Below, piece after piece: positions 5,849-64,000 of a DNA stretch of 64,000 bases (positions are counted from its first letter, which is position 1; every line of letters begins with the position of its first letter). The notes below the pieces were generated by a model. That model was not told the origin of the DNA, did not search any database, and saw only the letters and a list, made by a program, of their open reading frames with translations. This stretch comes from Dendrobates tinctorius (taxonomy: Eukaryota): assembly GCF_039654945.1 (NCBI RefSeq), contig NW_027361960.1, forward strand, positions 12,276,001-12,340,000, in the 5' to 3' direction. Both the position numbers and the translations under genes were made by a program.

Positions 5849-8634
5849 CCCCTTCACTACCAAGGGTGGTTTGCACGTTAACTACCGGGCCAATTTTTAC
5901 AATTCTGACCACTGTCCCTTTATGAGGTCATAACTCTGAAACGCTTCCGTGGATCCTGGTGATTCTGACACTGTTTTCTCATGACATATTGTACTTCATG
6001 TTAGTGGTAAAATTTCATTCATATAACTTGCGTTTATTTATGAGAAAAACGGAAATTTGGCGAAAATTTTGAAAATTCCGCAATTTTCCAACTTTGAATT
6101 TTTATTCCCTTAAATCACAGAGATATGGCACACAAAAAAGTTAATAAGTAACATTTGCCACATGTTTACTTTACATCAGCACAATTTTGGAACCAAAATT
6201 TTTATTTGTTAGTAAGATATAAGGGTTAAAAGTTGACCAGCGATCTCTCATTTTTGCAACACCATTTTATTTTTACGGACCACATCACATTTGAAGCCAC
6301 TTTGAGGGGTCTATATGATAGAAAATACCCAAAAGTGACACCATTCTAAAAACTGCACCCCTTAAGGTGCTTAAAACCACATTCAAGGAGTTTATTAACC
6401 CTTCAGGTGCGTCACAGGAATTTTTTGAATATTTAAAAAAAATTAACATTTAACTTACTTCAGGTTCAATTTTTTTTATTTTACCAAGTGTAACAGGAGA
6501 AATTGGACTGCAAAAATTATTATGCAATTTGTCCTGAACACGCTGATACCTGATATGTGGGGGGGAACCACTGTTTCGGCGCATGGCAGAGCTCGGAAGG
6601 GAGGGAGCGCCGTTTGACTTTTTCAATGCAAAATTGGCTGGAATTCTGATCGGACGCCATGTCGCGTTTGGAGAGCCCCTGATGTACCTAAACAGTGGAA
6701 ACCCCCCACAAGTGACCCCATTTTGGAAACTAGACCCCCCAAGGAACTTATCTAGATGTGTGGTGAGAACTTTGAACCCCCAAGTGCTTCACAGAAGTTT
6801 ATAACGCCCAGGCGTGAAAATAACAAAAACATTTTTTTCCACAAAAATGATATTTTTGCCCCAAAAGTTGTTTTGCAAATTGTCCTGAGTAGGCTGATAC
6901 CCCATATGAGGGGGTAAAACACTGTTTGGGTGCATGGCAGAGCTTGGAAGGGAAGGTGCACCATTTGACTTTTTCAACGCAGAATTGGCTGGAATTGAGA
7001 TCAGATGCCATGTTGCGTTTGGAGAGCACCTGATGTGCGCAAATAGTGGANNNNNNNNNNNNNNNNNNNNNNNNNNNNNNNNNNNNNNNNNNNNNNNNNN
7101 NNNNNNNNNNNNNNNNNNNNNNNNNNNNNNNNNNNNNNNNNNNNNNNNNNNNNNNNNNNNNNNNNNNNNNNNNNNNNNNNNNNNNNNNNNNNNNNNNNAT
7201 AAATACATTTTTTTAATTTTATTATTTTTCCCTAACTAAGGGGGTGATAACGGGGGGTTTGATTTACTATTTATGGCGGTTTTTATGTTTGACAGCTGTC
7301 GCACGCTAAAAGACGCTTTTTATTGTAAAAATAGTTTTTGCATCACCACATATTGAGAGCTATAATTTTTCCATATTTTGACCCACCGAGTCATGTGAGG
7401 TCTTATTTTTTGCGGGACAAGTTGATGCTTTTATTCATATCATGTTTGGGCATGTGACATTTTTTGATCGCTTTTTATTTCATTTTTTGGGACGCATAAT
7501 TTACAAAAACCAGCGTTTCATGAATTTCTTTTGGGTGGTGCGTTTACGCCGTTCCGGGTGCGGTAAAATTTATAAGGCGGTTTTATTCTTCGGGTCAGTA
7601 CGGTTACAGCGATACCTCATTTAGGTCTTTTTTTATGTTTTGGCGCTTTTATGCAATGAAAACAATTTTATATAAAAAATAATTATTTTTGCATCACTTT
7701 ATTCTGCGAGCTATAACTTTTTTATTTTTTCGCTGATGATGCTGTATGATGACTCGTTTTTTGCGGGACAAGATGACGTTTTCAGCGGTACCATGGATAT
7801 TTATATGCGTCTTTTTGATCGCGCGTTATTGCACTTTTTGTTCGGCGGTATGATAATAAATCATTATTTTTTGCTTCGTTTTTTATTTTTATTTTTTAAG
7901 GGGTTCGCTTAAGGGGTTAACTATTGGGACAGTTTTATAGGGCGGGTCGTTACGGACGCGGCGATACCAAGTATGTGTACTTTTATTGTTTTTTTTTTTA
8001 TTATTTCCAAAAAATGAATTTATTGGGGAATATTTTTTTTTTATTATTTTTTTTATTTGGCGATTTTTTTTTAATTATTTTTACACTTTTTTTTATTTTT
8101 TTTTACTTTATTACAATGTCCCAGGTGGGACTTCACTGTCCTGTGACAGATCACTGATCTGTCACATCACAGACCACTGTGACAGATCAGCGATCTGTCT
8201 CAGGCACTGCACAGGCTTCCTCATGCTTGCGCTTTGCAGGCACTGTGGAAGCCAGCTTCCTGCAGGCCCCCGGAGGTCCCCGTCGCCATATTGGATCCGG
8301 GGGCCTGGAGGAAAGGAGTCCCCCGCAGCAGCGCTGCACATTGCGCTGCCGTGGGGGGCTCAGGGAAGCAAGGAGGGAGCCCCCTCCCTGCCGATGCTTC
8401 CCTTTAACCCCCGGTACACCGCGATCGTGTTTGATCGCGGTGTGCAAGGGGTTAACGTGTCGGGGGCGGTCCGTGACCGCCCCTGACACATTGTGCCGGG
8501 TGTCAGCTATGATAATTAGCTGACACTCGGCCGCGATCAGCGGCGCTCACCACGTGGGCGCCGCTGATCGCGATGACGTAATATTCCATCCATGGTCACA
8601 TGGACGGAATATTACGTCATTTGTAGGTAAGGGG
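5849..8634 (+). mobile_element. TTAA-targeting non-autonomous DNA transposon (piggyBac/Kolobok-like) inside the L1 endonuclease
   Basis: TTAA TSD at 5845-5848 and 8635-8638. Short TIRs ccccttcactac / gtaggtaagggg. About 350-bp internal tandem repeat near the N gap; no transposase ORF seen. Confidence 0.9.
7051..7198. other. Assembly gap (run of N)
   Basis: N run inside the internal tandem repeat of the TTAA element. Confidence 0.99.
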
Positions 8635-17379: not shown

Positions 17380-20300
17380 TAGAGTTGAGCGATACCGTCC
17401 GATACTTCAAAGTATCGTATCGGATGGTATCGGCCGATCTTTAAAAAAAGTATCGGTATCGCCGATTCCGATACCGGAAGTCCCATTCAAGTCTATGGGA
17501 CTTCCGGTATCGGAATAAGAAAAACCCTTTCCTGCCCTTGTACAGCCTCTCTGGGGTCTGTACGGGCCTTTCGGGGGGCTGTGCCGGCCTGCCAGGGGGT
17601 CTGTGCAGGCTCCGGTGGTCTGTGCCGGCCTGCCGGTGGTCTGTGCAGGCTCCGGGGGGCTGTGCCGGCCTGCCGGGGGGCTGTGCCGGCCTGCCGGGGG
17701 GCTGTGCAGGCTCCGGGGGGCTGTGCCGGCCTGCCGGGGGGCTGTGCCGGCCTGCCGGTGGTCTGTGCAGGCTTCGGGGGTCTGTGCAGGCATCGTCCGA
17801 TGGGACTACAAGTCCCATCGGGCGATGCCTGCTACCATGACAGTGATTGACACATTAGCCAATGATGGGACAGTAGTAGTCCCATCATCCGGCTAATGTG
17901 TTAAATGTAAAAAAAAAAAAAAAAAAAAAATTACATGCTACATACATACAACATGCATACTACATACATGCTACATTCATACTACATACTACATACATGC
18001 TACATTCATACTACATAAATACTACATGCAACATACATACTACATATATACTACATGCATGCTACATACATACTGCATGCTACATACATACCACATATAT
18101 ACTACATACATACTACATGCATGCTACATGCATGCTACATGCTACATACATAACACATATATACTACATGCATGCTACATACATACTACATGCTACATAC
18201 TACATATATACTACATGCATGCTACATACTACATGCTACATACATACTACATATATACTACATGCATGCTACATACATACTGCATGCTACATGCATGCTA
18301 CATACATACCACATACATACTACATACATGCTACATATATACTACATGCATGCTACATACATACTACATATATACTACATGCATGCTACATACATACTAC
18401 ATGCTACATGCATGCTACATACATACTACATACATACTACATGCTACATACATACCACATATATACTACATACATACAATACATTCATACAATACATACA
18501 TAGACATACAGTACATATAACATAGAGTAACATACTTACCAATACTTGTCACATTGTTCCCCGAAGCCATTGTCTTTTCCGGAATAAATATTAACATAAC
18601 AAACCACAAAAATACTCACCCACGATCCGAAGCAGTCCACGAGTGTGTCCCACGACGATCTTGGGTAGAGAACTGCAGCATCAGATGATGCTGCCGTTCT
18701 CTACGGGCTGCAGGAATCCAATGACGGAAGGTAGGTATCCTTCCGCACTGTATTCCTCCGCCACTTAAAAAAAAAAAAAGTCCCTAGTCTCACTTTATGC
18801 CATTGCTGTGTGGGAAATTCCCACGCAGCAATGGCATAAAGTGAGACTAGGGACTTTTTTTTTTTTAAGTGGCGGAGGAATACAGTGCGGAAGGATACCT
18901 ACCTTCCGTCATTGGATTCCTGCAGCCCGTAGAGAACGGCAGCATCATCTGATGCTGCAGTTCTCTACCCAAGATCGTCGTGGGACACACTCGTGGACTG
19001 CTTCGGATCATGGGTGAGTATTTTTGTGGTTTGTTATGTTAATATTTATTCCGGAAAAGACAATGGCTTCGGGGAACAATGTGACAAGTATTGGTAAGTA
19101 TGTTACTCTATGTTATATGTACTGTATGTCTATGTATGTATTGTATGAATGTATTGTATGTATGTAGTATATATGTGGTATGTATGTAGCATGTAGTATG
19201 TATGTAGTATGTATGTAGCATGCATGTAGCATGTAGTATGTATGTAGCATGCATGTAGTATATATGTAGTATGTATGTAGCATGCATGTAGTATATATGT
19301 AGCATGTATGTAGTATGTATGTGGTATGTATGTAGCATGTAGTATGTATGTAGCATGCATGTAGTATATATGTAGTATGTATGTAGCATGTAGTATGTAT
19401 GTAGTATGTATGTAGTATGTATGTGGTATGTATGTAGCATGTAGTATGTATGTAGCATGCATGTAGTATATATGTAGTATGTAGTATGTATGTAGTATGT
19501 ATGTGGTATGTATGTAGCATGTAGTATGTATGTAGCATGCATGTAGCATGCATGTAGTATGTATGTAGCATGCATGTAGTATGTATGTAGCATGCATGTA
19601 GTATGTATGTAGTATGTATGTAGTATGTATGTAGCATGCAGTATGTATGTAGCATGTATGTAGTATGTATGTAGTATATATGTAGTATGTATGTAGCATG
19701 TAGTATGTATGTAGCATGCATGTAGTATGTATGTAGCATGTAGTATGTATGTAGCATGCATGTAGTATGTATGTAGCATGTATGTAGTATGTATGTAGTA
19801 TATATGTAGTATGTATATAGCATGTAGTATGTATGTAGCATGCATGTAGTATGTATGTAGTTTTTTTTTTTTTTTAACATTTAACACATTAGCCGGATGA
19901 TGGGACTACTACTGTCCCATCATTGGCTAATGTGTCAATCACTGTCATGGTAGCAGGCATCGCCCGATGGGACTTGTAGTCCCATCGGACGATGCTTGCA
20001 CAGACCCCCGGACATCAGCACAGCCCCCCGGCAGGCCGGCACAGCCCCCCGGCAGGCCGGTACAGACCCCCACAGGGTGCACAGACCACCGGCAGGCCGG
20101 CACAGCCCCCCGGCAGGCCGGTACAGACCCCCACAGGGTGCACAGCCCCCCGGCAGGCCGGCACAGCCCCCCGGCAGGCCGGTACAGACCCCCACAGGGT
20201 GCACAGACCACCGGCAGGCCGGCACAGCCCCCCGGCAGGCCGGTACAGACCCCGGGCAGTCCACACAGCCCCCCGGCAGGCCGGCACAGCCCCCCGGCAG

Positions 20301-20515
20301 GCCGGCAGAGACCCCCGGAAGGCCCGAAATGACGGCGCATCATGATGCGCACACACCGCGCATCATGATGACGTCAGTCTGTCAATCAACTTTGAACTTC
20401 CGATTCCGATGCCGAATTCCGATATTGAAAAAATATCGGAAGTCGGTATCGGAATTCCGATACAGCAAGTATCGGCCGATACCCGATACTTGCGGTATCG
20501 GAATGCTCAACACTA
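17380..20515. mobile_element. Non-autonomous hAT-type element with a giant internal palindrome
   Basis: Perfect 8-bp TSD ctagacac (17372-17379, 20516-20523). TIRs tagagttgagc / gctcaacacta. Confidence 0.9.
17560..20320. repeat. Long inverted repeat centred on 18817; each arm has a GC-rich minisatellite, a (CATA/CTA)n microsatellite and a near-perfect ~300-bp core
   Basis: Centre gtgggaa-a-ttcccac. 18500-18816 is essentially the reverse complement of 18818-19135. Confidence 0.95.
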
Positions 20516-21725: not shown

Positions 21726-22550
21726 ATTATTTTGTGATGCCGCATTGACTGTTTGGAAAGGTCACTCAGGTTTGTGTGCTGATAATGATGTTGGCATCAC
21801 TATTTTTGAGACAAGGCAAGGGGATTGTAGATATACCTTGTAATTAACCACATACTCTATTAAGTGTGTGTTGAATAAACTGATGACATGATGGTGAAAA
21901 TAAATGTTATATTTACTTCACCAATATCCTAGCCTTGTATCATAACTATCACACCTGGGCAGGTGAATACACATGAGTTTTAACCTGCAGCGTTGCTTCA
22001 GTCTCCATATATTTGAAGCAAACTGTAGCGATGCTGCAGTTTAAGTCATATGTGTATTCTCCTGCCCATGTGTGATAACTTTGTGAAGTCAGTATGCGTT
22101 AGTTTGTGCGTCCTCACCAGCATGACACCAGGCCTGGGTATTGTAGATGTTATATAAACTTTATTATGTCTCCAGTGTGCGTTCAAACTCAAGCCACAGT
22201 GGTGATCCTACAAATAATATTTATAGTCACATGTGTAGGTGTCATAAAAAGTGAAGGATGCCAGTGCATCCACAAATCACTATTTGTAAAATCGGCCCAT
22301 GTGACACAAATATTAGTTGTGCTAATTGAACACACACTGTAGAGATGATAAAGGTCATACAACTTGTGTGTGTATGTATAGTCACCTGGTCAGGAGTACT
22401 AGTAAATTCATGATGCACAAAACACAGCATCATAAATTCACTGGTAAACCAGGCCAGTTGATAATAGTATTGGGAGTATAAAAAGACATAATGCACTCAG
22501 TACAGGTATCAAAACAGTGTTTTTATTAACATACCAACAAGAAAATTGTT

Positions 22551-24027
22551 TTACACCATTTGCTCTTGCCATTCCACCCGTCCTACATCTGAGTTGACTT
22601 AGGCCGCAAATTGGTCCCTCATTTGGCCAACTTCAACCGATGACCTGAGAGGGTGCTGAGTAAATTCAGGCAATGGATTAGGAGCAACATCATTAAGATC
22701 TAAGTTTGGGTGCTCTCTAGCCATGACAAAATTATGTAGAACCACACAGGCCTTCACCACCTCATCCACTGTTTCCAGTTTCAGATTAATGGCTGTGCCG
22801 AGAATGCGCCATCTGGATACAAGTATACCAAAGGCACACTCAACAGTTCTTCTGGCCCTGGTCAGCCTGTAATTATATATTCTTTTGGTGTGGTCCAAGT
22901 CCCAGCTGGAGTAGGGCTTGAGCAGGTTTTGGCACATCTGGAATGCCTCATCCCCAACCATTACAAAGGGCTATGGGGGACCTTCGGTGTTGGGAAGAGG
23001 CTGCGGCTTGGGGAAATTGAACTGGTTGCCATACAATCTCCGGCCCATGTCTGAGTTCTTAAAGGCCTGGGAGTCATTCTCATGGCCAAATGCACCAATG
23101 TCCACTGCAAAAAACATACAGTCTGCATCCGCAATGGCCATGAGTACAGTAGAAAAGTACTTTTTATAGTTGTAGTACTCAGATCCAGTTCTTTTTGGCT
23201 TGATAATCCGGATGTGTGTCCCATCAACCGCTCCCAAACAGTTGGGGAAATTGCAGACTGTCCAGAAATTTTCAGCGATTTCCAACCACTTTTCTGCGGT
23301 GGGCAGGGGCATGAATTCTGGACAGAGAACATTCCACAAAGCCCGGCTGGTGTCCGCTACAATTCCAGACAACGTGGATATTCCAATACGGTACTGGAAG
23401 TGGAGTCAAGAGAGGGTCTCTCCAGTAGCCAGGAATCTGGGAAACCAAGAAAAAACAAAAATTATTATTTATGTATATGGATTTTTAAAACACCAAAAAT
23501 AAAATAAAATAAAAAAAATTCATAAAAATACATCTGCAGCCTTTTGTTCACTACATGCCATAAAAAAAATACCCGCAGCCTTTTGTTAACTACATGGCAG
23601 AACTATAATTCTGCCAGATTTGGAATAGTGCATGTCACAACAAAGAAAAATGCAGGCATTGGTTTTACAATACTACGTACCATAATGTAACCAGGAGCTG
23701 TTCCTCAGGAGTAATCGCATGCCGGAGCTGCGTGTCCTGTCTCCGGATGGCTTCTTGGACACAACCAAGCAAATCGTTAAAGCTTTCTTGGGACATCCGG
23801 GTATAGTCAGTAAATTTCTCCGGGTTTGCCTGTAGCTCACTGTAGAGGGTGTGGTACGCTCCACGGCTGTCCCGGAGTTCAATAATGGCATGTATCGACA
23901 AACGCCGCCGCTGCCGTCTTCGCTGTCTCTCTCTCTCCCTTTGTTGATGGCAAGCAACTGCATAAGCCTGAGCCATCCTGATGTCCAGATCCAAGTAAAA
24001 GTAAAAACTCTTCCAGCGCAGATCCAT
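22551..24027 (-). pseudogene. Harbinger DDE transposase (HARBI1/DDE_Tnp_4 family), two exons, disrupted
   Basis: FPNCLGAVDGTHI, YYNYKKYFS, GDEAF, RARRTVECAFG. Stops near 23407 and 22599 and a frameshift near 22975. Confidence 0.92.
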
Positions 24028-40808: not shown

Positions 40809-42202
40809 ATGGATCTGCGCTGGAAGAGTTTTCACTTCAACTTGGATTTGGACATCGTGATGGCTCAGGCTTATGCAGTTGCTTGCCATGAACAAAGGAA
40901 GAGAGAGAGGCAGCGAAGACGGCAGCGTATGTGGATACATCCGATTGTTGAACTCCGGGAGAGCCGTGGGGCATACCACACCCTCTACAGTGAGCTACAG
41001 GCAAACTCGGAGAAATTTACAGATTATATCCGGATGTCCCAAGAAAGCTTCAGGGATTTGCTTGCTCGTGTCCAAGAATCCATCCGGAGACAGGACAAAC
41101 AGCCCCGTCGTGCGATTCCTCCTGAGGAACGGCTACTGGTGACATTACGGTACGTAATATTTAAAAACCAAGGGGTGGGGTCTGATGGGTTTTTTTTTAC
41201 ATGTACTATACAAAACGTTGGCTAATTATTTTTCGTCAATGTACTAATATTTTTTTTTATAGTTTTACAAAACCATATACAGAAATATTAATTTTACTTC
41301 TTTCTCTGTTTCGCAGATTCCTGGCGACTGGAGAGACCCTATCTTCAATACACTTCCAGTACCGTATTGGAATCTCTACCTTGCCTGGAATTGTTGCGGA
41401 CACCTGCCGGGCTCTCTGGAATGTTCTTTGTCCAGAATTTATGCCCCTGCCCACCGCTGAAAAGTGGATGGAAATTGCTGACAAATTCTGGACAGTCTGC
41501 AATTTCCCCAACTGTTTGGGAGCTGTTGATGGTAAACACATACGGATCATCAAACCCAAAAGAACTGGATCTGAGTACTATAATTACAAAAAGTACTTTT
41601 CAATAGTACTCATGGCCATTGCGGATGCCGGATGTATGTTTGCAGCAATGGACATTGGAGCATTTGGCCGTGGTAATGACTCACAGGCTCTTAAAAACTC
41701 AGACATGGGCCGGAGGTTGTATGGCAACCAATTTAATTTCCCTATGCCACGGCCTCTTCCTCACACCGAAGCTCCGCCACTGCCCTTTGTAATGGTTGGG
41801 GATGAGGCTTTTCAAATGTGCGCAAACTTACTGAAACACTACTCCAGCCGGGACTTGGACCACACCAAAAAAATATTTAATTACAGGCTGACCAGGGCCA
41901 GAAGAACTGTCGAGTGTGCTTTTGGGATTGTTGTCTCCAGATGGCGAATTCTCGGCACAGCCATTAATCTTAAACTTGAAACAGTCGATGAGGTGGTGAT
42001 GGCGTGTGTGGTTCTACATAATTTTGTGATGGCTAAAGAGCACCCGACCTTTGAACTCGATGATGCTGCTCCTAACCCATTGCCTGAATTCACTCAGCAC
42101 CCTGTCAGGTCATCCGTTGAAGTTGGCCAAATGAGGGACCAATTTGCGGCCTACTTTATCTCTGATGTAGGACAGGTGCACTGGCAAGATGAAATGGTGT
42201 AA
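40809..42202 (+). CDS. Harbinger DDE transposase, intact spliced ORF (exons 40809-41149 and 41317-42202; 408 aa)
   Basis: A GTACGT...TTCGCAG intron joins LLVTLR to FLATG in frame (341+886=1227 nt). AVDGKHI, GDEAF and VECAFG supply the D, D, E residues. Confidence 0.88.
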
Positions 42203-43205
42203 TAATGTTTTCGTTTGTGTATGTTAATAAAAAACCTGATTTGATACCAGTACCGAGTGCACTGTTTTTTACACTCCAATAAAATAAAAAACTTCCCATG
42301 TATACCTGTGAATTCATGATGTTCTCAAACCTGTGCAGGTAAATACACATATGAGTTAAAATGCAGCATCGCTAGTCTGCGTTAAATATATTGGTACGTA
42401 AGCAAAGCTGCAGGATAAATATGATATGTGTATTATCCAGGCCATGATTGATAAATAGTTATGATTATGACATTTGAGCGACTTTGGTAGGATCGGGTTT
42501 CATGAAACCAAATTTGTTTGAAATGAAACTTGTCCAACTAGTGGAAAACAAGTTGGAGATTCGTTCAAAACCAAACCACAATGCAAAGAAACTCGCCTTT
42601 TTTTTGCCCGAGTTTCACCAGTTTGTGTTTCAGGAAACCAGATCCTAGTCGGTAAAATGCTGGTTATTATACTAGGCCTTTTTTTATTTAACATATTAAC
42701 ATATGATGTGTATTTTACCCATCAGTGGATTCAACACACAAGAGTATGTTGTTAATTACAAGGTATATCAATAATCCCCCTTGCCTAGAATCACAATAAG
42801 TGAAATGAGGATGGTAAAAACAGCCAATCCTCCAAACACTTTTTATGACACCTTGCAAAGTTTAAGCCACATTGTGTGTACGGCGCAGTGTGTGTGAGTG
42901 GCGCCAAAAACATTAATCAACCTTTGTTATGGTGAACCAGAAATTTTAAATTTATTTTTAACCAGAAAAATTAAAAAAAACTTTATTTTTTTCTGCGTTT
43001 GGGGGCAGATGGTTGCAAGTTGGGGGTGTGCAGGGAAGATGCAGAACTTACAGTTGAAGAAGGTGTTCTAGGGGAAGGGGCAACAAAACTTGTGGGGGAA
43101 GGGAGTCCAGTTATGGGAATTGAACTAGAATCACTTGGAGGAGAGGAAAGAGGTTCAGGGACATTGGTCCTAAGTGCTTGTTTCCGTAAACTTGTCTGCC
43201 TGGAC

Positions 43206-50895: not shown

Positions 50896-51182
50896 AGTGT
50901 AAGGCCGGGGTCACACTAACTGACGCAAAATACGGTCCGTAGTTTACATGCGTAATACGGATGAATGACTCCTAAATAGTGCTAAGTATGTCATCCGTAA
51001 GCAAGGTGTGGTCGCGTATTTTGCACATGTCTGCATCCGTATGTAATCCGTATGGCATCCGTATGCAATCCGTATGGCGAGATTTTCTCGCCACCTTACA
51101 AAATGGACATATAATGGAGCCCTATGACAGGGCTTCTAACAGAAACAAAATAATAGATATAGACACATAGAATGCATATATA

Positions 51183-52788
51183 CAGTGGGGCAAAAAAGTA
51201 TTTAGTCAGTCAGCAATAGTGCAAGTTCCACCACTTAAAAAGATGAGAGGCGTCTGTAATTTACATCATAGGTAGACCTCAACTATGGGAGACAAACTGA
51301 GAAAAAAAAATCCAGAAAATCACATTGTCTGTTTTTGTTTCAATTTATTTGCATATTATGGTGGAAAATAAGTATTTGGTCAGAAACAAGCAATCAAGAT
51401 TTCTGGCTCTCACAGACCTGTAACTTCTTCTTTAAGAGTCTCCTCTTTCCTCCACTCATTACCTGTAGTAATGGCACCTGTTTAAACTTGTTATCAGTAT
51501 AAAAAGACACCTGTGCACACCCTCAAATAGTCTGACTCCAAACTCCACTATGGTGAAGACCAAAGAGCTGTCAAAGGACACCAGAAACAAAATTGTAGCC
51601 CTGCACCAGGCTGGGAAGACTGAATCTGCAATAGCCAACCAGCTTGAAGTGAAGAAATCAACTGTGGGAGCAATAATTAGAAAATGGAAGACATACAAGA
51701 CCACTGATAATCTTCCTCGATCTGGTGCTCCACGCAAAATCCCACCCCGTGGGGTCAGAATGATCACAAGAACGGTGAGCAAAAATCCTAGAACCACGCG
51801 GGGGGACCTAGTGAATGAACTGCAGAGAGCTGGGACCAATGTAACAAGGCCTACCATAAGTAACACACTACGCCACCATGGACTCAGATCCTGCAGTGCC
51901 AGACGTGTCCCACTGCTTAAGCCTGTACATGTCCGGGCCCGTCTGAAGCTTGCTAGAGAGCATTTGGATGATCCAGAGGAGTTTTGGGAGAATGTCCTAT
52001 GGTCTGATGAAACCAAACTGGAACTATTTGGTAGAAACACAACTTGTCGTGTTTGGAGGAAAAAGAATACTGAGTTGCATCCATCAAACACCATACCTAC
52101 TGTAAAGCATGGTGGTGGAAACATCATGCTTTGGGGCTGTTTCTCTGCAAAGGGGCCAGGACGACTGATCCGGGTACATGAAAGAATGAATGGGGCCATG
52201 TATCGTGAGATTTTGAGTGCAAACCTCCTTCCATCAGCAAGGGCATTGAAGATGAAACGTGGCTGGGTCTTTCAACATGACAATGATCCAAAGCACACCG
52301 CCAGGGCAACGAAGAAGTGGCTTCGTAAGAAGCATTTCAAGGTCCTGGAGTGGCCTAGCCAGTCTCCAGATCTCAACCCTATAGAAAACCTTTGGAGGGA
52401 GTTGAAAGTCCGTGTTGCCAAGCGAAAAGCCAAAAACATCACTGCTCTAGAGGAGATCTGCATGGAGGAATGGGCCAACATACCAACAACAGTGTGTGGC
52501 AACCTTGTGAAGACTTACAGAAAACGTTTGACCTCTGTCATTGCCAACAAAGGATATATCACAAAGTATTGAGATGAAATTTTGTTTCTGACCAAATACT
52601 TATTTTCCACCATAATATGCAAATAAAATGAAAAAAAAACAGACAATGTGATTTTCTGGATTTTTTTTTCTCAGTTTGTCTCCCATAGTTGAGGTCTACC
52701 TATGATGTAAATTACAGACGCCTCTCATCTTTTTAAGTGGTGGAACTTGCACTATTGCTGACTGACTAAATACTTTTTTACCCCACTG
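51183..52788 (+). mobile_element. Full-length Tc1 transposon with about 210-bp TIRs
   Basis: TA|cagtggggcaaaaaagtattt ... aaatacttttttaccccactg|TA; long, near-identical TIRs. Confidence 0.95.
51550..52572 (+). CDS. Tc1 DD34E transposase, intact 340 aa
   Basis: Paired-like [47 protein letters not shown], ending KGYITKY; no stops. Confidence 0.96.
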
Positions 52789-52800
52789 TATATATATATA

Positions 52801-54445
52801 CAGTCATATGTAAAAGTTTGGGCACCCCTATTAATGTTAACCTTTTTTCTTTTTAACAATTTTGTTTTTTGCAACAGCTATTTCAGTTTCATATATCTAA
52901 TAACTGATGGACTCAGTTATATTTCTGGATTCAAATGAGGTTTATTGTACTAACAGAAAATGTGCAATCTGCATTTAAACAAAATTTGACCGGTGCAAAA
53001 GTATGGGCACCCTTATCATTTTCTTGATTTGAACACTCCTAACTACTTTTTACTGACTTCCTGAAGCACTAAATTGGTTTTGTAACCTCATTGAGCTTTG
53101 AACTTCATAGCCAGGTGTATCAAATCATGAGAAAAGGTATTTAAGGTGGCCACTTGCAAGTAGTTCTCCTATTTGATTCTCCTATGAAGAGTGGCATCAT
53201 GGGCTCCTCAAAACAACTCTCAAATGATATGAAAACAAAGATTATTCAACATAGCTTTTCAGGGGAAGGATACAAAAAGTTGTCTCAGAGATTTAACCTG
53301 TCAGTTTCCACTGTGCGGAACATAGGAAATGGAAGAACACAGGTACAGTTCTTGTTAAGCCCAGAAGTGGCAGGCCAAGAAAAATATCAGAAAGGCAGAG
53401 AAGAAGAATGGTGAGAACAGTCAAGGACAATCCACAGACCACCTCCAAAGACCTGCAGCATCATCTTGCTGCAGATGGTGTCACTGTGCATCGGTCAACA
53501 ATACAGCGCACTTTGCACAAGGAGAAGCTGTATGGGATAGTGATGCGAAAGAAGCCGTTTCTGCAAGCACGCCACAAACAGAGTCGCCTGAGGTATGCAA
53601 AAGCACATTTGGACAAGCCAGTTACATTTTGGAAGAAGGTCCTGTGGACTGATGAAACAAAGATTGAGTTGTTTGGTCATACAAAAAGGCGTTATGCATG
53701 AAGGCTAAAAAACACAGCATTCCAAGAAAAACACTTGCTACCCACAGTAAAATTTGGTGGAGGTTCCATCATGCTTTGGGGCTGTGTGGCCAATGCCGGC
53801 ACCGGGAATCTTGTTAAAGTTGAGGGTCGCATGGATTCAACTCAGTATCAGCAGATTCTTGACAATAATGTGCAAGAATCAGTGACGAAGTTGAATTTAC
53901 GCAGGGGATGGATATTTCAGCAAGACAATGATCCAAAACACCGCTCCAAATCTACACAGGCATTCATGCAGAGGAACAATTACAATGTTCTGGAATGGCC
54001 ATCCCAGTCCCCAGACCTGAATATCATTGAACATCTGTGGGATGAGTTGAAGCGGGCTGTCCATGCTCGGCGACCATCAAACTTAACTGAACTGGAATTG
54101 TTTTGTAAGCAGGAATGGTCACACATACGTTCATCCAGGATCCAGGAACTCATTAATAGCTACAGGAAGCAACTAGAGGCTGTTATTTTTGCAAAAGGAG
54201 GATCTACAAAATATTAATGTCACTTTTATGTTGAGGTGCCCATACTTTTGCACCGGTCAAATTTTGTTAAAATGCAGATTGCACATTTTCTGTTAGTACA
54301 ATAAACCTAATTTGAATCCAGAAATATAACTGAGTCCATCAGTTATTAGATATATGAAACTGAAATAGCTGTTGCAAAAACCAAAATTGTTATAAAAAAA
54401 AAAGGTTAACATTAATAGGGGTGCCCAAACTTTTACATATGACTG
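52801..54445 (+). mobile_element. Second Tc1 family, full length
   Basis: TA|cagtcatatgtaaaagtttggg ... cccaaacttttacatatgactg|TA; about 210-bp TIRs. Confidence 0.95.
53199..54217 (+). pseudogene. Tc1 transposase pseudogene
   Basis: WTDETK, FQQDNDPKH, SPDLNIIEHLW. 4-bp deletion near 53325 (relative to 60001-60016) and TGA at 53699-53701. Confidence 0.93.
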
Positions 54446-55114
54446 TATATACACACAAGTCATTGAGATAAACATATATATATATTTATATTTCACGGAG
54501 TTCTTCATAGCAGAATAGCCGCTTATTAAATTGCTGGCTTCTATCAAATCATTCCCCAACCCGACATGAAATGACACATGGTTTACATTCAGTAAAGCAT
54601 TTCATTTCATGTTTTTTTATATGTCCTTGACTAATAAATAGATGAGGGTTTGTGTGCAAAATTTGGGAGTTGTAGTTGTTATTTTAAGGGGTTAATTCGT
54701 TGTTAAAAAAATGCGTGGACTTCCCATTGCCCTGTAGCGGTGCCTAATGGGTTAATCTTACAAAGGGTTAATGTCACCTTACAATCGAATGGTGACATTA
54801 ACCCTTTGTTAGATTAACCCACTCGCCACCACTATAGGGCAATGGGAAGCCCACGCATTTTTTAACAACGAATTAACCCCTTAAAATAACAACTACAACT
54901 CCCAAATTTTGCACACAAACCCTCATCTAATTATTAGTCAGGGACATATAAAAATGCATGAAATGAAATGCTTTACTGAATGTAAATCATGTGTCATTTC
55001 ATGTCGGGTTGGGGAATGATTTGATAGAAGCCGGCAATTTAATTAGCGGCTATTCTGCTATGAAGAAATCTGTGAAATATAAATACATATATGTTTGTCA
55101 CAATGACATGTATG

Positions 55115-57394: not shown

Positions 57395-58447
57395 CGGTGT
57401 CATGTGGGGTCTTTTTTTTGCAGGACGAGTTAATGTTTTTATTGGTACCATTTTCGGGCACGTGACATTTTTTGATCACTATTTATTCCGATTTTTGGGA
57501 TGCAGAATGAACAAAAAACAGCATTTCAAGAATTTCTTTTGGGGGGTGCGTTTACACCGTTCCGCGTGCGGTAAAATTGATAAAGCGGTTTTATTCTTCG
57601 GGTCAGTATGGTTACAGCGATACCTCATTTATGTCGTTTTTTATGTTTTGGCGCTTTTATGCAATGAAAACAATTTTACATAAAAAATAATTATTTTTGC
57701 ATCGCTTTTTTCTGCGAGCTATAACTTTTTATTTTTTTGCTGATGATGCTGTGTGGCAGCTCGTTTTTTGCGAGACAAGATGACGTTTTCAGCGGTACCA
57801 TGGTTATTAATATTCTTCTTTTTGATCGCGCATTATTGCACTTTTTGTTCGGCGGTATCATAATAAAGCATTATTTTTTGCTTTGTTTTTTATTTTTTAA
57901 GGGGTTTGCTAAAGGGGTTAACTAATGGGATAGTTTTATAGGGCGGGTCGTTACAGACGTGGCGATACTAAATATGTGTACTTTTATTGTTTTTTGAATG
58001 AATTTATTAGGGAATATTTTTTATTTTAATTTATTTAGCGATTTTTTCTAAATTATTTTTACACTTTTTTTTTTTAACTTTATTATACTGTCCCAGGGGG
58101 GACATCACTGTCATGTGTGAGATCGTTGATCTGACACATCACAGATCGCTGTGACAGATCAGCGATCTCACGCAGGCAGTGCAGAAGGCTTCCTCATTCT
58201 TGCGCTTTGCAGGCAGTGAGGAAGCCGGCTCCCTGCAGGACCCCGAAGGTCCCTGCCACCATATTGGGTCCGGGGACCTGCAGGGAAGGAGGCCCCCACA
58301 GCAGCGCTGCACGTCTCGCTGCTACAGGGGTCTCAGGGAAGCACGGAGGGAGCCCCCTCCCTGCCGATGCTTCCCTAAACCCCTGGTACACTGCGATCGT
58401 GCTTGATCGCAGTGTGACAGGGGTTAACGTGACCGCCCCTGACACAT
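57395..58447 (+). mobile_element. Internal/right fragment of the TTAA family
   Basis: Collinear with about 7388-8490. Confidence 0.85.
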
Positions 58448-58891
58448 GGTTCATCTACTATGAAACCCATGATGTCAACATGGAAACATCAAGAAGCATC
58501 TCATAATTTAATATAAAATATATAATTTTATTTGAACAATTTAATTACAATATACACAGAAAGGGATGCATTTAAAAAGAGGGACCTAATAAGCTGTGCC
58601 AAAACTAATATTCGGACAGTAAACCCATATGAAAAGCACACACCATCAAATATCATGAAATCTGTATAAAAGGACAAGGTTTAAACCATAATTATTTTTA
58701 CAAAATATGCATTATCAGTTTTTGGTCCAACCAATTTCCCCTAGTAACCACATGTGCCTACATAATGACAGGAACAAACCTCCAATAAATACAGGCTGTA
58801 AATAACATGCCCCAAAAAATGTGAAATAGGGGGAAACAATTTACCTGACACCAAGGGTGCTGCCCGCCGCACAGACAATGGAGTCCCTCTG

Positions 58892-58926
58892 CCCCGACGC
58901 ACGTTTTGCTTCGCTTCTTCGGGAGG
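58892..58926 (-). ncRNA. Degenerate minimal hammerhead-like motif in a pLTR (second copy 63936-63970, +)
   Basis: cctc-CCGAAGA-a-gc gaa gc-AAAA-cgtgcg-TC-gggg: type I topology with a variant core. Confidence 0.5.
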
Positions 58927-59481
58927 TGTGTCAGCGCAGGGGGCCAGCAAGGTTAAATACCATCTGTGACCAATCCATAGGAAAGATCTACCAGCGTCAT
59001 AGGTCTCATCGGCGCATGCGCTAACCAATCTCGCTCCCATATCAAAGTATTTCCAGGTGTTCCAGTCACATGTATAAACACATGCTGGAACGTCCACTCA
59101 GGCTCTCCATGCGTGCATCATCATGAAAAAAACAGAGACCCGTGAACTGGTGAGCTCATGGTCTGCGCATGCGTACTAACCAGACACTGGGAAATTACCA
59201 TTAAGGGACGGAAGGGCCGAAACAATGGACATTATGTGATCCCCAAAAGCAAAGTGCATAATAGTGCAATATATCAAATGCACAGTAAGTAAATAAAGTG
59301 CATGAAGGGAACGCGACATAAGTATTATAGGTAGTAATACGTGCTGTGTAAAATATTTATACGTTATATGATAAAAAATATATATATTATATAATAAAAA
59401 ACTTTTTACACCATATGAAAATCAAATTAATAGGTGACAAAAAATTCCAAAAATATATAATTGTATCAAAAATACTATATA

Positions 59482-61095
59482 CAGTCATATGTAAAAGTTT
59501 GGGCACCCCTATTAATGTTAACCTTTTTTCTTTATAACAATTTTGGTTTTTGCAACAGGTATTTCAGTTTCATATATCTAATAACTGATGGACTCAGTTA
59601 TATTTCTGGATTCAAATGAGGTTTATTGTACTAACAGAAAATGTGCAATCTGCATTTAAACAAAATTTGACGGGTGCAAAAGTATGGGCACCCTTATCAT
59701 TTTCTTGATTTGAACACTCCTAACTACTTTTTACTGACTTCCTGAAGCACTAAATTGGTTTTGTAACCTCATTGAGCTTTGAACTTCATAGCCAGGTGTA
59801 TCAAATCATGAGAAAAGGTATTTAAAGTGGCCACTTGCAAGCAGTTCTCCTATTTGATTCTCCTATGAAGAGTGGCATCATGGGCTCCTCAAAACAACTC
59901 TCAAATGAACTGAAAACAAAGATTATTCAACATAGCTTTTCAGGGGAAGGATACAAAAAGTTGTCTCAGAGATTTAACCAGTCAGTTTCCACTGTGAGGA
60001 ACATAGTAAGGAAATGGAAGAACACAGGTACAGTTCTTGTTAAGCCCAGAAGTGGCAGGCCAAGAAAAATATCAGAAAGGCAGAGAAGAAGAATGGTGAG
60101 AACAGTCAAGGACAATCCACAGACCACCTCCAAAGACCTGCAGCATCATCTTGCTGCAGATGGTGTCACTGTGCATCGGTCAACAATACAGCGCATGCAT
60201 AACGCCTTTTTGTATGACCAAACAACTCAATCTTTGTTTCATCAGTTCACAGGACCTTCTTCCAAAATGTAACTGGCTTGTCCAAATGTGCTTTTGCATA
60301 CCTCAGGCGACTGTTTGTGGCGTGCTTGCAGAAACGGCTTCTTTCGCATCACTCTCCTATACAGCGTCTCCTTGTGCAAAGTGCGCTGTATTGTTGACCG
60401 ATGCACAGTGACACCATCTGCAGCAAGATGATGCTGCAGGTCTTTGGAGGTGGTCTGTGGATTGTCCTTAACTGTTCTCACCATTCTTCTTCTCTGCCTT
60501 TCTGATATTTTTCTTGGCCTGCCACTTCTGGGCTTAACAAGAACTGTACCTGTGTTCTTCCATTTCCTTACTATGTTCCTCACAGTGGAAACTGACAGGT
60601 TAAATCTCTGAGACAACTTTTTGTATCCTTCCCCTGAAAAGCTATGTTGAATAATCTTTGTTTTCAGATCATTTGGGAGTTGTTTTGAGGAGCCCATGAT
60701 GCCACTCTTCATAGGAGAATCAAATAGGAGAACTGCTTGCAAGTGGCCACCTTAAATATCTTTTCTCATGATTTGATACACCTGGCTATGAAGTTCAAAG
60801 CTCAATGAGGTTACAAAACCAATTTAGTGCTTCAGGAAGTCAGCAAAAAGTAGTTAGGAGTGTTCAAATCAAGAAAATGATAAGGGTGCCCATACTTTTG
60901 CACCCGTCAAATTTTGTTTAAATGCAGATTGCACATTTTCTGTTAGTACAATAAACCTCATTTGAATCCAGAAATATAACTGAGTCCATCAGTTATTAGA
61001 TATATGAAACTGAAATACCTGTTGCAAAAACCAAAATTGTTATAAAGAAAAAAGGTTAACATTAATAGGGGTGCCCAAACTTTTACATATGACTG
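59482..61095. mobile_element. Fold-back Tc1 derivative made of two left halves in inverted orientation
   Basis: 59482 to about 60195 is the 5' part of the 52801 family on +; about 60195-61095 is its 5' part on -. TA TSD confirmed by the empty site at about 63375-63395. Confidence 0.92.
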
Positions 61096-61578
61096 TATTA
61101 AACAGTATATCAAAAAGTATACCATACATGACAATGAAATAGTGCAAAAAAGTAGCGCCAATTCAGTGCAAATTACTATGATATAAAAGACAATACATCC
61201 ATTTGTAAAATAAAAAATGGCCAGTCCATATTGCGATCATCATTTCAATACTTCATGTAGACTGTGTCCAAGGCCCTTTTCTTCCACCCATACATGGCAA
61301 AAATCTAGCAAAGACGCTTCCACAACCACCGTCACACTATTCAGGAATTAACCATGAAGATCCATACTGAAATAGAAAATTAATGCAATATACAAATTAA
61401 AAACAAATTCCAGGAATAAGAAAATTAGGGTAAAGAATAAGAAACAAAAATAAGAAACCCCCCCAACCCTAATACTAAAATAATTCTTCCCATTTATTGC
61501 TAGATGAAATTGAAAAATTAATAAAAAATGAAAAATGAAAAACAACGAAAAGAAGAGAAAGAGACAATCCTATGTATA

Positions 61579-63207
61579 TTAATCCAAAATTACTCCAAAA
61601 AAGCTCTCATTGAGGCCAAATGGTGCCACCGTGCCTAACCTATAGATCCATTGGCACTCCTTTTTAGCCAACCTCTTTCCCAAATCCCCATCCCGGAAGC
61701 CCATGTGGATCGTATCAATCCCTTTGAACCTTAAGAGTTTGGGATTGCATTGATGAAATTTCTTAAAGTGTCTTGGAACTGTTTTCAACAAGGAATCGTC
61801 CAAGACACCCCTGGCTTTCTCTATGTCTAAACAGTGCTCTCTCACCCTGATCTTAAGTTCTCTACTTGTTAACCCAATGTATATTTTGTCGCAAGGACAT
61901 ACCACATAGTAACTGACACCTTTGCTTGCACATGTTATATGGGTTCTGATGTCATAAGTTCTGGTGGCTTCCTGATTTTTAAATGTCTTACTTTTTGTCA
62001 TGTTGTTACAACCTTTACACATGCCACATGGGTAGAAACCACACTTCTCTCTACTCCGTAGGTCCTCATCACATTTTTTGGGATTATAGTGGCTATGCAC
62101 CAAAATGTCACGTAAATTTGCCAATGTTTTTTCATGACATCTCTTATTTCCTGCCATCTATTATTATACCTGGTGATAAATGTAACCTAGTTACCATCCT
62201 GAGTTTGAATATGTGGTTGTCCTTGTTGATATAGCAAATTATTCCTTGATATTTGTTTGACTCTCTGATATCCTTTAGAAATGGTTCATTTACCATACCC
62301 TCTTTCTCTTAAACGATCAGTAAGCTGTGGAGCTTCCTGTTCAATTTGTTGTTCCTCAGAGCAAATCCTCTTAATCCTCATAAATTGTCCTATTGGGATT
62401 CCTTGAATAGTACTTTGGGGATGTGCTGAGGTCGCATATAAATAGGAATTGGTTGCCGTGGATTTCCGGAATACCGATGTTGATAAATGACCAGTAGGAG
62501 AGGCTGTAATGAAAATATCAAAAAAATCAATACTTCTCCCAAACTTGTAAGATAATCTGATATTAAGATTATTGTTATTTAAGTCAGCCATTAGTTGTTC
62601 CAGGCCATTAATTGGACCTTCCCATATGAACAGAATGTCATCGATAAATCGAATCCATTTATGGATGTGTTCTGTACCTGCCACTGTCTCATCTTGAAAA
62701 ATGGCCCATTCCCATGCTCCCAAGAAAAAGGTTTGCGTACGAGGGGGCACAAGAAGCCCCCATCGCAGTCCCCTGTAGCTGCCAAAAAAATTTTTTGTTG
62801 ATGGTGAAAATATTGTGCGTAAGCACAAATTCCAACAATTACAAAATTAACTCAATCATTTCTTTATCCAAGCTACTGTGTCTCAAATATCTGGAGACCA
62901 CTCTCAGGCCATCTTCATGCCTAATGGATGAATATAAAGCCTCCACGTCTGCGGTCACCAGGACCATATCGGTGTTAAGCTGTATTTGGTCCAGATGCCC
63001 CAAAGCTGCCGTGGTGTCTTTACTGTACGAGGGCAATTCAGTGACAATGGGTTTCAAATAGAACTCAATGATATTACAAACTGTTTCACACAACCCCTCT
63101 TTTGCAGAAACAATTGTCCTCCCAGGTGGATCTAGGGCATCTTTGTGCACTTTGGGTAGTAAATAAAATGTAGCCAAACGGGGATGTGCGGATTTACTGT
63201 ATGTAGA
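61579..63207 (-). pseudogene. Penelope RT + Cys-rich linker + GIY-YIG endonuclease, frameshifted
   Basis: FYLLPKVHKD, ADVEALYSSI, RFIDDILFIW, VFRKST, CGMCKGC, YYVVCPCDKIYIGLTSRELKIRVREH, PFGLNE. Confidence 0.92.
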
Positions 63208-64000
63208 CTTGGACACAGTCTACATGAAGTATTGAAATGATGATCGCAATATAGACAGGCCATTTTTTATTTTATAAATGGATGTATTGTCTTTTATATC
63301 ACAGTAATTTGCACTGAATTTGCACTACTTTTTTGCACTATTTCATTATCATGTATGGTATACTTTTTGATATACTGTTTAATATATAGTATTTTTGATA
63401 CAATTATATATTTTTGGAATTTTTTGTCACCTATTAATTTGATTTTCATATGGTGTAAAAAGTTTTTTGTTATATAATATATATTTTTTATCATATAATG
63501 TATAAATATTTTACACAGCACATATTACTACCTAAAATACTTATGTCGCGTTCCCTTCATGCACTTTATTTACTTACTGTGCATTTGATATTTGCACTAT
63601 TATGCACTTTGCTTTTGGGGATCACATAATGTCCATTGTTTCGGCCCTTCCGTCCCTTAATGGTAATTTCCCAGCGTCTGGTTAGCACGCATGCGCAGAC
63701 CATGAGCTCACCAGTTCACGGGTCTCTGGTCTTTTGCATGATGACACACGCATGGAGAGCCTGAGTGGGTGTTCCAGCGTGTGTTTATACATGTGACCGA
63801 AACACCCGGAACTACTTTGATATGGGAGCGAGATTGGTTAGTGCATGCGCCGATGAGACCTATGACGCTGGTAGATCTTTCCTACGGATTGGTCACAGAT
63901 GGTATTTAACCTTGCCGGCCCCCTGCCCTGACATGCCTCCCGAAGAAGCAAAGCAAAATGCGAGTCGGGGCAGAGGGACTACATTGTCTGTGCGGCGGGC

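What the first reader, a model, noticed from the sequence alone, without database searches (positions are those of the whole stretch)
59482..61097. Fold-back Tc1 with two left ends that transposed as a unit
Seen: two 5' halves (promoter and DNA-binding-domain coding region) are joined at ...cagcgCAtgcataac... with only short microhomology, giving ~700-bp inverted arms. The empty site in the sister pLTR (aatactataTAttaaacag) shows a clean TA duplication. Inference: convergent transcription gives hairpin RNA against the transposase 5' region and/or DNA-binding-only peptides, a possible trans-repressor analogous to maize Mu killer. It also shows how long-TIR MITEs can arise.
Basis: partly seen in the sequence, partly recalled or inferred. 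Interest (0 to 1): 0.7.

Follow-up and report, generated by a model that had tools for sequence, protein, structure and literature searches.

The report
Fold-back Tc1 transposon, two left halves
A defective "jumping gene" in a poison-frog-like genome is built from two mirror-image copies of its own front half and was inserted cleanly into another mobile element; the structure is real and probably one copy of a multi-copy family, but it is a known kind of repair accident and its proposed self-silencing role is untested.

Summary
The element spans 59482-61095 (1614 bp) and has TA on both sides. Arm 1 (59482-60195) is positions 1-714 of a Sleeping-Beauty-like IR/DR Tc1. The rest (60196-61095) is the reverse complement of positions 1-900. 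This gives 714-bp inverted arms with 7 mismatches, a 186-nt loop and a junction with 2-nt (CA) microhomology. A near-full-length copy of the same family at 52801-54445 serves as reference.

The host is a Penelope-like element. Its other pLTR, which is inverted, carries the uninterrupted site with a single TA (63375-63393).

[quoted passage not shown] There is no catalytic domain.

My reading is a non-autonomous derivative made once by aberrant break or gap repair (template switch or fold-back priming). It was then mobilised in trans through its two left ends.

An independent sample of the same species holds two short contigs across the same junction. Earlier notes of this scan report the same 714-bp-arm, 1614-1616-nt element on at least five other pieces of this genome; I could not check those directly.

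No hairpin RNA, small RNA or repressor peptide is shown. It is a new member of a known kind (mosquito Goblin MITE, maize Mu killer).

The parts
59480..59481 (.). Left TA target-site duplication
   Evidence: Read directly. The empty paralogous site has a single TA.
59482..60195 (+). Arm 1: element positions 1-714 (left IR/DR end, 5' leader, start of the transposase gene)
   Evidence: 98% identical to 52795-53510 of the near-full-length copy. Differs from arm 2 at 7 of 714 positions.
59482..59692 (+). Left IR/DR terminal inverted repeat (~211 bp) with an outer and an inner transposase-binding-type direct repeat (59490-59512, 59675-59697)
   Evidence: Direct repeats D2/D3. The four-way TIR alignment shows left and right ends of the family alike up to position ~211.
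59880..60272 (+). ORF 1, 130 aa: native transposase residues 1-105 (PAI subdomain, GRPR, part of RED), then 25 junction-derived residues and a stop
   Evidence: Pfam HTH_SB 3.7e-15 and HTH_Tnp_Tc3_2 1.1e-08, covering only positions 1-38 of 72.
60194..60197 (.). Head-to-head junction (60195|60196) with 2-nt CA microhomology
   Evidence: Ordinary family contigs diverge before 60194.
60196..60381 (-). Single-copy loop: element positions 715-900, present only in the inverted arm; carries a 2-bp deletion relative to the family
   Evidence: In one search table 4, X15 contigs have 2 extra letters behind 60310.
60382..61095 (-). Arm 2: reverse complement of element positions 1-714
60242..60697 (-). 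ORF 2, 151 aa from the ATG: PAI and RED DNA-binding subdomains, then a frameshifted tail
   Evidence: Pfam HTH_Tnp_Tc3_2 3.5e-17 and HTH_SB 1e-15. PDB matches to the Sleeping Beauty RED (5unk) and PAI (2m8e) subdomains.
61096..61097 (.). Right TA target-site duplication
63375..63393 (-). Paralogous empty site in the sister pLTR
Evidence: Uninterrupted alignment across 63383/63382.
58862..61272 (+). The pLTR copy of the Penelope-like host element that carries the insertion (58862-59481 and 61098-61272)
   Evidence: 95-96% identical to 64000-63208 on the minus strand.
61579..63216 (-). Body of the host element: RT-like ORFs and a GIY-YIG endonuclease ORF
   Evidence: ORFs. The best relatives are named GIY-YIG domain-containing proteins of Ranitomeya imitator. 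Pfam gave no hit.
52801..54445 (+). Near-full-length but degenerate copy of the same Tc1 family, used as reference
   Evidence: DDE_3 3.2e-14. Catalytic part matches SB100X (5cr4) at 1.5e-53.

Best explanation
This is a non-autonomous fold-back derivative of a Sleeping-Beauty-like IR/DR Tc1 family.

Origin (inferred): one aberrant repair event produced it. Either repair synthesis after excision switched from one terminal repeat to the other on the template, or a nascent or resected 3' end folded back on itself and primed. The two products, positions 1-714 and 1-900, were joined at a 2-nt microhomology.

Result (shown): two complete left ends face each other, each next to a TA. The unit has everything the family's transposase needs in cis and nothing in trans.

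Mobilisation (inferred): it was mobilised as a unit by transposase from autonomous relatives. This copy integrated at a TA in one pLTR of a Penelope-like element after that element's two pLTRs had begun to diverge. The 7 arm differences accumulated since the arms were identical.

RNA (computed for the sequence only): any transcript across it would fold into a ~710-bp hairpin. Silencing or repressor activity is a possibility, not a finding.
For: - Structure: arms, loop and junction are as described.
- Common origin of the arms: both share the same differences from the neighbouring family copy (positions 53, 65, 78, 191, 361, 429, 516 and a 4-bp indel). At 78, 191 and 361 the arm 2 letters, which arm 1 shares, also differ from the family majority in four sequencing runs (table 3). 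The 3 and 4 private changes per arm are derived.
- Family identity: TA duplication, CAGT ends, 211-bp IR/DR ends, HTH_SB and HTH_Tnp_Tc3_2 in the arms, DDE_3 in the reference copy. PDB matches to Sleeping Beauty.
- Precise insertion: clean relative to the paralogous empty site.
- Same junction elsewhere: run X15 (same species label, other sample and study) has two overlapping contigs of 50 and 45 nt across 60195|60196. Each has one mismatch. Their depth is about 15, against 430-456 for the neighbouring family words and 7.6 for a flank-like contig.
- Second sample at this locus: in X5 a 335-nt contig runs from the right flank through the TA 11 nt into the element.
- Published model for the same architecture: the Goblin MITE from Ozma has both sides derived from one end, at unequal lengths, with inverted microhomology (PMC3814204). 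SDSA gap repair is described for Tc1 and P elements (PMC3878927).
- Two left ends can work: a Sleeping Beauty donor with identical left IRs is used as a substrate in PMC5224488.
- Leads only: six earlier notes of this scan describe fold-back Tc1 copies on other pieces of this genome. Five are 1614-1616 nt and two of those state 714-bp arms.
Against:
- The junction-spanning contigs of X15 have only 23-27 letters on each side, under the tool's 31-letter rule. X15's library type is a guess.
- For X1, X5 and X6 the listed pieces do not show whether the junction is bridged.
- A protein word search for the junction-specific ORF tail found nothing.
- The same structure with the same TA could in principle have formed in place during repair of an ordinary copy at this site.
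- Left- and right-end letters do not differ consistently, so no switch point inside the terminal repeat can be seen.
Confidence: 0.8

Rival explanations
1. Local rearrangement in place. An ordinary full-length Tc1 inserted at this TA. Later its 3' part was replaced by an inverted copy of its 5' part, during gap repair after an excision attempt or by replication template switching. The fold-back itself never moved.
For: The outer 211 bp of left and right ends are almost the same in this family, so an ordinary right end could not be told from an inverted left end. Only one copy is in the window. Gap repair restores elements at the same site with the same TA (PMC3878927).
Against: Junction-spanning contigs exist in two variants in another sample. 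Each has one mismatch to this locus, and their depth is about twice that of a flank-like contig. Earlier scan notes report same-length elements, two with the same 714-bp arm length, on at least five other pieces of the genome (unchecked by me).
Confidence: 0.1
2. Functional trans-repressor in the manner of Mu killer. Transcripts starting in either arm, or read-through transcripts, fold into a ~710-bp hairpin. This is processed into small RNAs against the 5' part of the transposase mRNA. In addition or instead, the two ORFs give DNA-binding-only peptides that occupy the family's ends or poison transposase assembly.
For: - Either strand folds with 709-710 arm-to-arm pairs, about -1365 kcal/mol.
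- Both arms keep an ATG, a TATA-like motif about 55 nt upstream and open DNA-binding-domain frames.
- Sleeping Beauty IRs have moderate regulatory activity, and RNAi limits its transposition (PMC3878927).
- Dominant-negative complementation is described for mariner (same review).
- Frog embryos make TE-derived small RNAs (PMC3875865).
Against: - No RNA or small-RNA evidence at all: only contigs were served, and the one possible RNA run is a guess.
- The private arm changes are few and include amino-acid changes, so there is no sign of constraint.
- ORF 1 is cut inside the RED subdomain.
- The family is at very high copy number in all runs laid, so it was not stopped early.
- In vertebrate somatic cells long dsRNA is mostly not diced into siRNAs (general knowledge).
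Confidence: 0.08
3. Assembly artefact: a chimeric or fold-back long read created a false palindrome.
For: Palindromic chimeras are a known artefact of long-read libraries (general knowledge). The listed contigs of X1, the likely source sample, do not show the junction either way.
Against: - The structure ends exactly at transposon termini with a TA duplication.
- The arms are unequal and differ at 7 sites.
- The same junction is present in contigs of another sample.
Confidence: 0.02

Closest known systems
Goblin MITE derived from the Tc1/mariner element Ozma in Aedes aegypti (Yang et al. 2013, PMC3814204)
   Same: Both sides of the junction come from the same end of the autonomous element, with different lengths and in inverted orientation. 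The join is at microhomology. It is explained by template switching between the terminal repeats during gap repair followed by end joining, and the product is then mobilised as a non-autonomous element.
   Different: Goblin is miniature (54-bp TIRs), uses the right end and has 6-nt microhomology plus one inserted base. Here the arms are 714 and 900 bp, come from the left end, and keep the leader and an open DNA-binding-domain frame. The microhomology is 2 nt and the element is as long as a full-length copy.
Mu killer of maize (PMC3440606)
   Same: [quoted passage not shown] It can give a long hairpin RNA.
   Different: Mu killer is a single, immobile locus of a Mutator element. It is transcribed from a flanking gene and is shown genetically to silence MuDR through siRNAs. 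Here the unit has intact transposon ends and a TA duplication, is probably multi-copy, and no RNA or silencing has been shown.
Sleeping Beauty / IR-DR Tc1 elements of vertebrates (PMC5224488)
   Same: TA target, ~211-230-bp terminal repeats with two binding-site repeats each, paired-like PAI and RED DNA-binding domain, DDE catalytic domain (in the reference copy). There are direct sequence matches to Sleeping Beauty domain structures.
   Different: The fold-back lacks the catalytic domain and the right end. It is a derivative, not an autonomous element.
KP-type and dominant-negative truncated transposases (P element KP; mariner dominant-negative complementation, reviewed in PMC3878927)
   Same: Truncated frames that keep the DNA-binding part and lose catalysis.
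   Different: Those are shown to be expressed and to repress. Here only open frames are seen, one of them cut inside the RED subdomain.
Foldback (FB) elements of Drosophila
   Same: Very long inverted arms.
   Different: FB arms are built of tandem subrepeats and are unrelated to Tc1 (from general knowledge, not tested). Here the arms are unique transposon sequence, and the only direct repeats found inside them are the two 23-nt binding-site repeats.

Membership tests
Tc1/mariner, IR/DR (Sleeping-Beauty-like) group | TA target-site duplication | tested here: met
   TA at 59480-81 and 61096-97, and a single TA at the empty site 63375-63393.
Tc1/mariner, IR/DR (Sleeping-Beauty-like) group | Long terminal inverted repeats (~200-230 bp) with two direct-repeat binding sites per end | tested here: met
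   211-bp ends. Repeats at 59490-59512 and 59675-59697, mirrored in the other arm.
Tc1/mariner, IR/DR (Sleeping-Beauty-like) group | Transposase with a paired-like HTH domain and a DDE catalytic domain | tested here: not met
   The fold-back has HTH_SB and HTH_Tnp_Tc3_2 twice but no DDE domain. The family copy at 52801-54445 has DDE_3 and matches SB100X at 1.5e-53. The fold-back is therefore a non-autonomous derivative of the family.
Template-switch / abortive-gap-repair derivative (Goblin type) | Both subterminal regions derive from the same end of the parent, in inverted orientation and with unequal lengths | tested here: met
   Positions 1-714 and 1-900 of the left end.
Template-switch / abortive-gap-repair derivative (Goblin type) | Junction at short microhomology without long homology | tested here: met
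   2-nt CA. Ordinary copies diverge before 60194.
Template-switch / abortive-gap-repair derivative (Goblin type) | Several copies with the same junction at different loci, each with its own target duplication | tested here: inconclusive
   Two variant junction contigs in run X15 and earlier scan notes of same-sized copies elsewhere. No second locus could be read.
Mu-killer-like hairpin silencer | Inverted duplication of the transposase 5' region including the terminal repeat | tested here: met
Mu-killer-like hairpin silencer | A transcript that spans both arms | tested here: inconclusive
   X15 holds junction contigs, but its RNA label is only a guess and contigs cannot show transcripts.
Mu-killer-like hairpin silencer | Small RNAs from the stem and heritable silencing of the autonomous element | not testable with these tools
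   No small-RNA run or raw reads were offered.
Truncated-transposase repressor (KP-like) | Expressed protein that keeps DNA binding and inhibits transposition | not testable with these tools
   Only open frames of 130 and 151 aa with HTH domains are seen.
Penelope-like element (host of the insertion) | GIY-YIG endonuclease downstream of a reverse transcriptase, flanked by pLTRs that may be direct or inverted | tested here: inconclusive
   The 192-aa ORF's best relatives are named GIY-YIG domain-containing proteins. Inverted flanking repeats are 95-96% identical. Pfam gave no hit for any of the three ORFs, so the reverse transcriptase is not confirmed.

The most novel reading that the evidence does not exclude
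The fold-back is an amplified, mobile counterpart of Mu killer. It would be a non-autonomous family that spreads using the parent's transposase. Wherever it is transcribed, for example in introns and 3' UTRs as earlier notes suggest, it would deliver a ~710-bp perfect hairpin against the transposase 5' region. That would feed germline small-RNA pathways and shut down its own parent family in a vertebrate.
Probability: 0.1. Interest if true: 0.75.

Novelty: new member of a known kind. Interest (0 to 1): 0.33.

Why it matters
It is a clean, datable vertebrate example of how one repair accident turns an autonomous Tc1 into a long-armed non-autonomous element that can still move. It supports the template-switch model for long-TIR derivatives. 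If its copies are transcribed, each would give a very long perfect dsRNA hairpin against the transposase 5' region. That would make the frog a natural system for asking whether vertebrates use such hairpins to start transposon silencing. As it stands it is an ordinary product of transposon decay, and the same scan has already reported it several times on other DNA of this genome.

Tried and rejected
- Protein word search with the junction-specific tail of ORF 1 (residues 88-130), hoping to find other fold-back loci in public assemblies: no hit.
- Exact 22-nt junction word in JGI metagenome contigs: no match. Frog DNA is not expected there, so this says little.
- Earlier findings by sequence: blank.
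- Reads: only Logan contigs were served, with no raw or small-RNA reads. The listing keeps few pieces, so junction bridging in X1, X5 and X6 cannot be judged, and depth is not a copy number.
- Left- versus right-end diagnostic letters, to find a switch point inside the terminal repeat: the five left/right differences in the one reference copy are inconsistent, and both arms are identical over 1-211.
- Pfam on the three host ORFs: no hit. Host identity rests on named homologues and on the inverted flanking repeats.
- I did not use the exhaustive protein search or structure prediction, because the domains were already clear.
- I built no consensus of the family and repaired no frame.

Full report
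**What is there**

The stretch 59479-61098 contains a 717-nt inverted repeat that is 99% complementary, with 186 nt between the arms. The window also holds a 1645-bp copy of the same element at 52801-54445, which has two proper ends. That copy has a 4-bp deletion and a stop codon, so it is degenerate but nearly full length.

Aligned to that copy, the left arm (59482-60195) is element positions 1-714. Everything from 60196 to 61095 is the reverse complement of positions 1-900. The element is therefore two left halves joined head to head. It has 714-bp arms and a 186-nt single-copy loop (60196-60381), 1614 bp in all.

At the join the two parents share only CA. Contigs of ordinary family copies in four sequencing runs part from this sequence exactly before 60194, which agrees (loose ends).

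**Family**

- The ends begin with CAGT next to TA.
- They are alike for 211 bp on the left and right of the reference copy.
- They carry two 23-nt direct repeats each, the IR/DR layout.
- The arms encode HTH_SB and HTH_Tnp_Tc3_2 domains, and the reference copy encodes DDE_3.
- The DNA-binding frames match the solved PAI and RED subdomains of Sleeping Beauty.
- The catalytic part of the reference copy matches SB100X at E 1.5e-53.

The fold-back has no catalytic domain. Its plus-strand frame (59880-60272, 130 aa) has 105 native residues, then 25 residues read from the antisense of the loop. Its minus-strand frame (60697-60242, 151 aa) runs through the whole RED subdomain and ends after a 2-bp deletion.

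**The insertion site**

The left flank 58862-59481 and the right flank 61098-61272 continue into each other without interruption in 64000-63208 on the minus strand, at 95-96% identity.

Between the two repeat copies, on the minus strand, lie RT-like frames and a 192-aa frame. The best relatives of the 192-aa frame are GIY-YIG domain-containing proteins of the poison frog Ranitomeya imitator, at 57-58% identity. Pfam found nothing in these frames.

A GIY-YIG frame flanked by inverted repeats fits a Penelope-like element with inverted pLTRs. The insertion is younger than the roughly 5% divergence between the two pLTRs.

**History of the arms**

Both arms share the same differences from the neighbouring family copy: positions 53, 65, 78, 191, 361, 429, 516 and a 4-bp indel. 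At 78, 191 and 361 the arm 2 letters, which arm 1 shares, also differ from the family majority in all four runs (table 3). The arms are therefore copies of one source.

Arm 1 has 3 private changes and arm 2 has 4. Where the runs covered them, the private letters are the minority state, so they arose after the arms were identical. About 1% arm-to-arm divergence means the fold-back is young but not brand new.

**How it arose (inferred)**

The architecture is one end present twice, at unequal lengths, joined at tiny inverted microhomology. This is what two processes predict:
- template switching between the terminal repeats during synthesis-dependent repair of an excision gap;
- a 3' end folding back on its own strand and priming.

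The same architecture and model are published for the mosquito MITE Goblin, derived from the Tc1/mariner element Ozma (PMC3814204). SDSA gap repair is documented for Tc1 and P elements (PMC3878927). The terminal repeats gave no consistent left-versus-right letters, so I could not locate a switch point.

**Did it move as a unit?**

The TA duplication and the empty site show that something with Tc1 ends inserted here. They do not show that it was already a fold-back.

Two lines bear on this. First, run X15 carries the same species label but comes from another sample and study. It holds two overlapping contigs of 50 and 45 nt across 60195|60196.
- Each has one mismatch to this locus.
- Their depth is about 15. 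The adjacent family words stand at 430-456 and a flank-like contig at 7.6.
- Two variants, neither identical to this copy, suggest other copies.
- However, each has only 23-27 letters on either side, below the tool's 31-letter rule. The run's library type is a guess, and contig depth is not a copy number.

Second, earlier notes of this same scan describe fold-back Tc1 elements of 1614-1616 nt, two of them stating 714-bp arms, on at least five other pieces of this genome. One shorter derivative is also noted. These are unchecked AI notes that I could not read at sequence level. They moved my reading from a one-off towards a multi-copy non-autonomous family. I treat that as likely (about 0.75), not shown.

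In X5, another sample, a 335-nt contig runs from the right flank through the TA and 11 nt into the element. This hints that this particular insertion is shared between individuals. In organism B (run X6) the family is abundant at 95-99% identity, but this flank is absent at that threshold.

A Sleeping Beauty donor with two identical left IRs is used as a working substrate in PMC5224488. Two left ends are therefore not an obstacle in principle.

**Function**

A transcript of either strand would fold with 709-710 arm-to-arm pairs at about -1365 kcal/mol. Both arms keep an ATG and a TATA-like motif about 55 nt upstream. That is the entire positive evidence.

No raw reads, small-RNA runs or confirmed RNA runs were available. 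Precedents exist:
- Mu killer (PMC3440606);
- regulatory activity of Sleeping Beauty IRs and RNAi limiting its transposition (PMC3878927);
- dominant-negative complementation in mariner (PMC3878927);
- TE-derived small RNAs in Xenopus embryos (PMC3875865).

None of these tests this locus. The few arm differences include amino-acid changes and show no constraint. I put a selected or effective repressor role at about 0.1.

**Verdict**

'Transposed as a unit' is likely. The silencing and repressor ideas are untested.

It is a new member of a known kind of transposon derivative, and the scan has already found the same element elsewhere in this genome. 

Noticed in passing
window 51176-52795: A second, different IR/DR Tc1-type element. 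Its ends (51176-51389 and 52582-52795) are 214 nt long and 98.6% alike in inverted orientation. It abuts the near-full-length copy at 52801 across a (TA)n tract, and its interior shows weak similarity to the other family's transposase region.
   Followed up: partly
window 61272-64000 (minus strand): Penelope-like host element with inverted pLTRs (95-96% identical), RT-like frames without any Pfam hit, and a GIY-YIG frame. Its closest named relatives are from Ranitomeya imitator at only 57-58% identity. The window ends inside the sister pLTR.
   Followed up: partly
window 54476-55092: 235-nt inverted arms, 96% complementary and 147 nt apart, directly to the right of the full-length Tc1 copy. 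It looks like a MITE or another small fold-back.
   Followed up: no
window 17840-20380: Large minisatellite field with 11/18-nt and 21-nt units. It contains a 578-nt palindrome (18201-18778 and 18855-19432, 95% complementary).
   Followed up: no
window 7390-8459 and 57399-58431: A direct repeat of about 1 kb at 85.6% identity, 50 kb apart. The second copy lies just upstream of the pLTR that carries the fold-back.
   Followed up: no
window 22483-23503 and 41250-42270: 1021-nt inverted repeat at 86% complementarity, 17.7 kb apart. One arm lies inside the Harbinger region noted by another first-stage finding.
   Followed up: no
window 59482-61095 versus 52801-54445: The fold-back (1614 bp) is almost exactly as long as a full-length element (1645 bp). 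This may be coincidence or a size preference for mobilisation.
   Followed up: no
window 53699-53701: The stop codon TGA in the near-full-length copy is private to that copy. The family majority in all four runs laid reads TGG there (from the loose-end consensus before 60194).
   Followed up: partly
run X6 (organism B) laid on window 60046-61400: A different species holds thousands of contigs of this Tc1 family at 95-100% identity, yet nothing of the flanking pLTR at 95% or more. The family is either very young and shared by close relatives, or was transferred between species.
   Followed up: no
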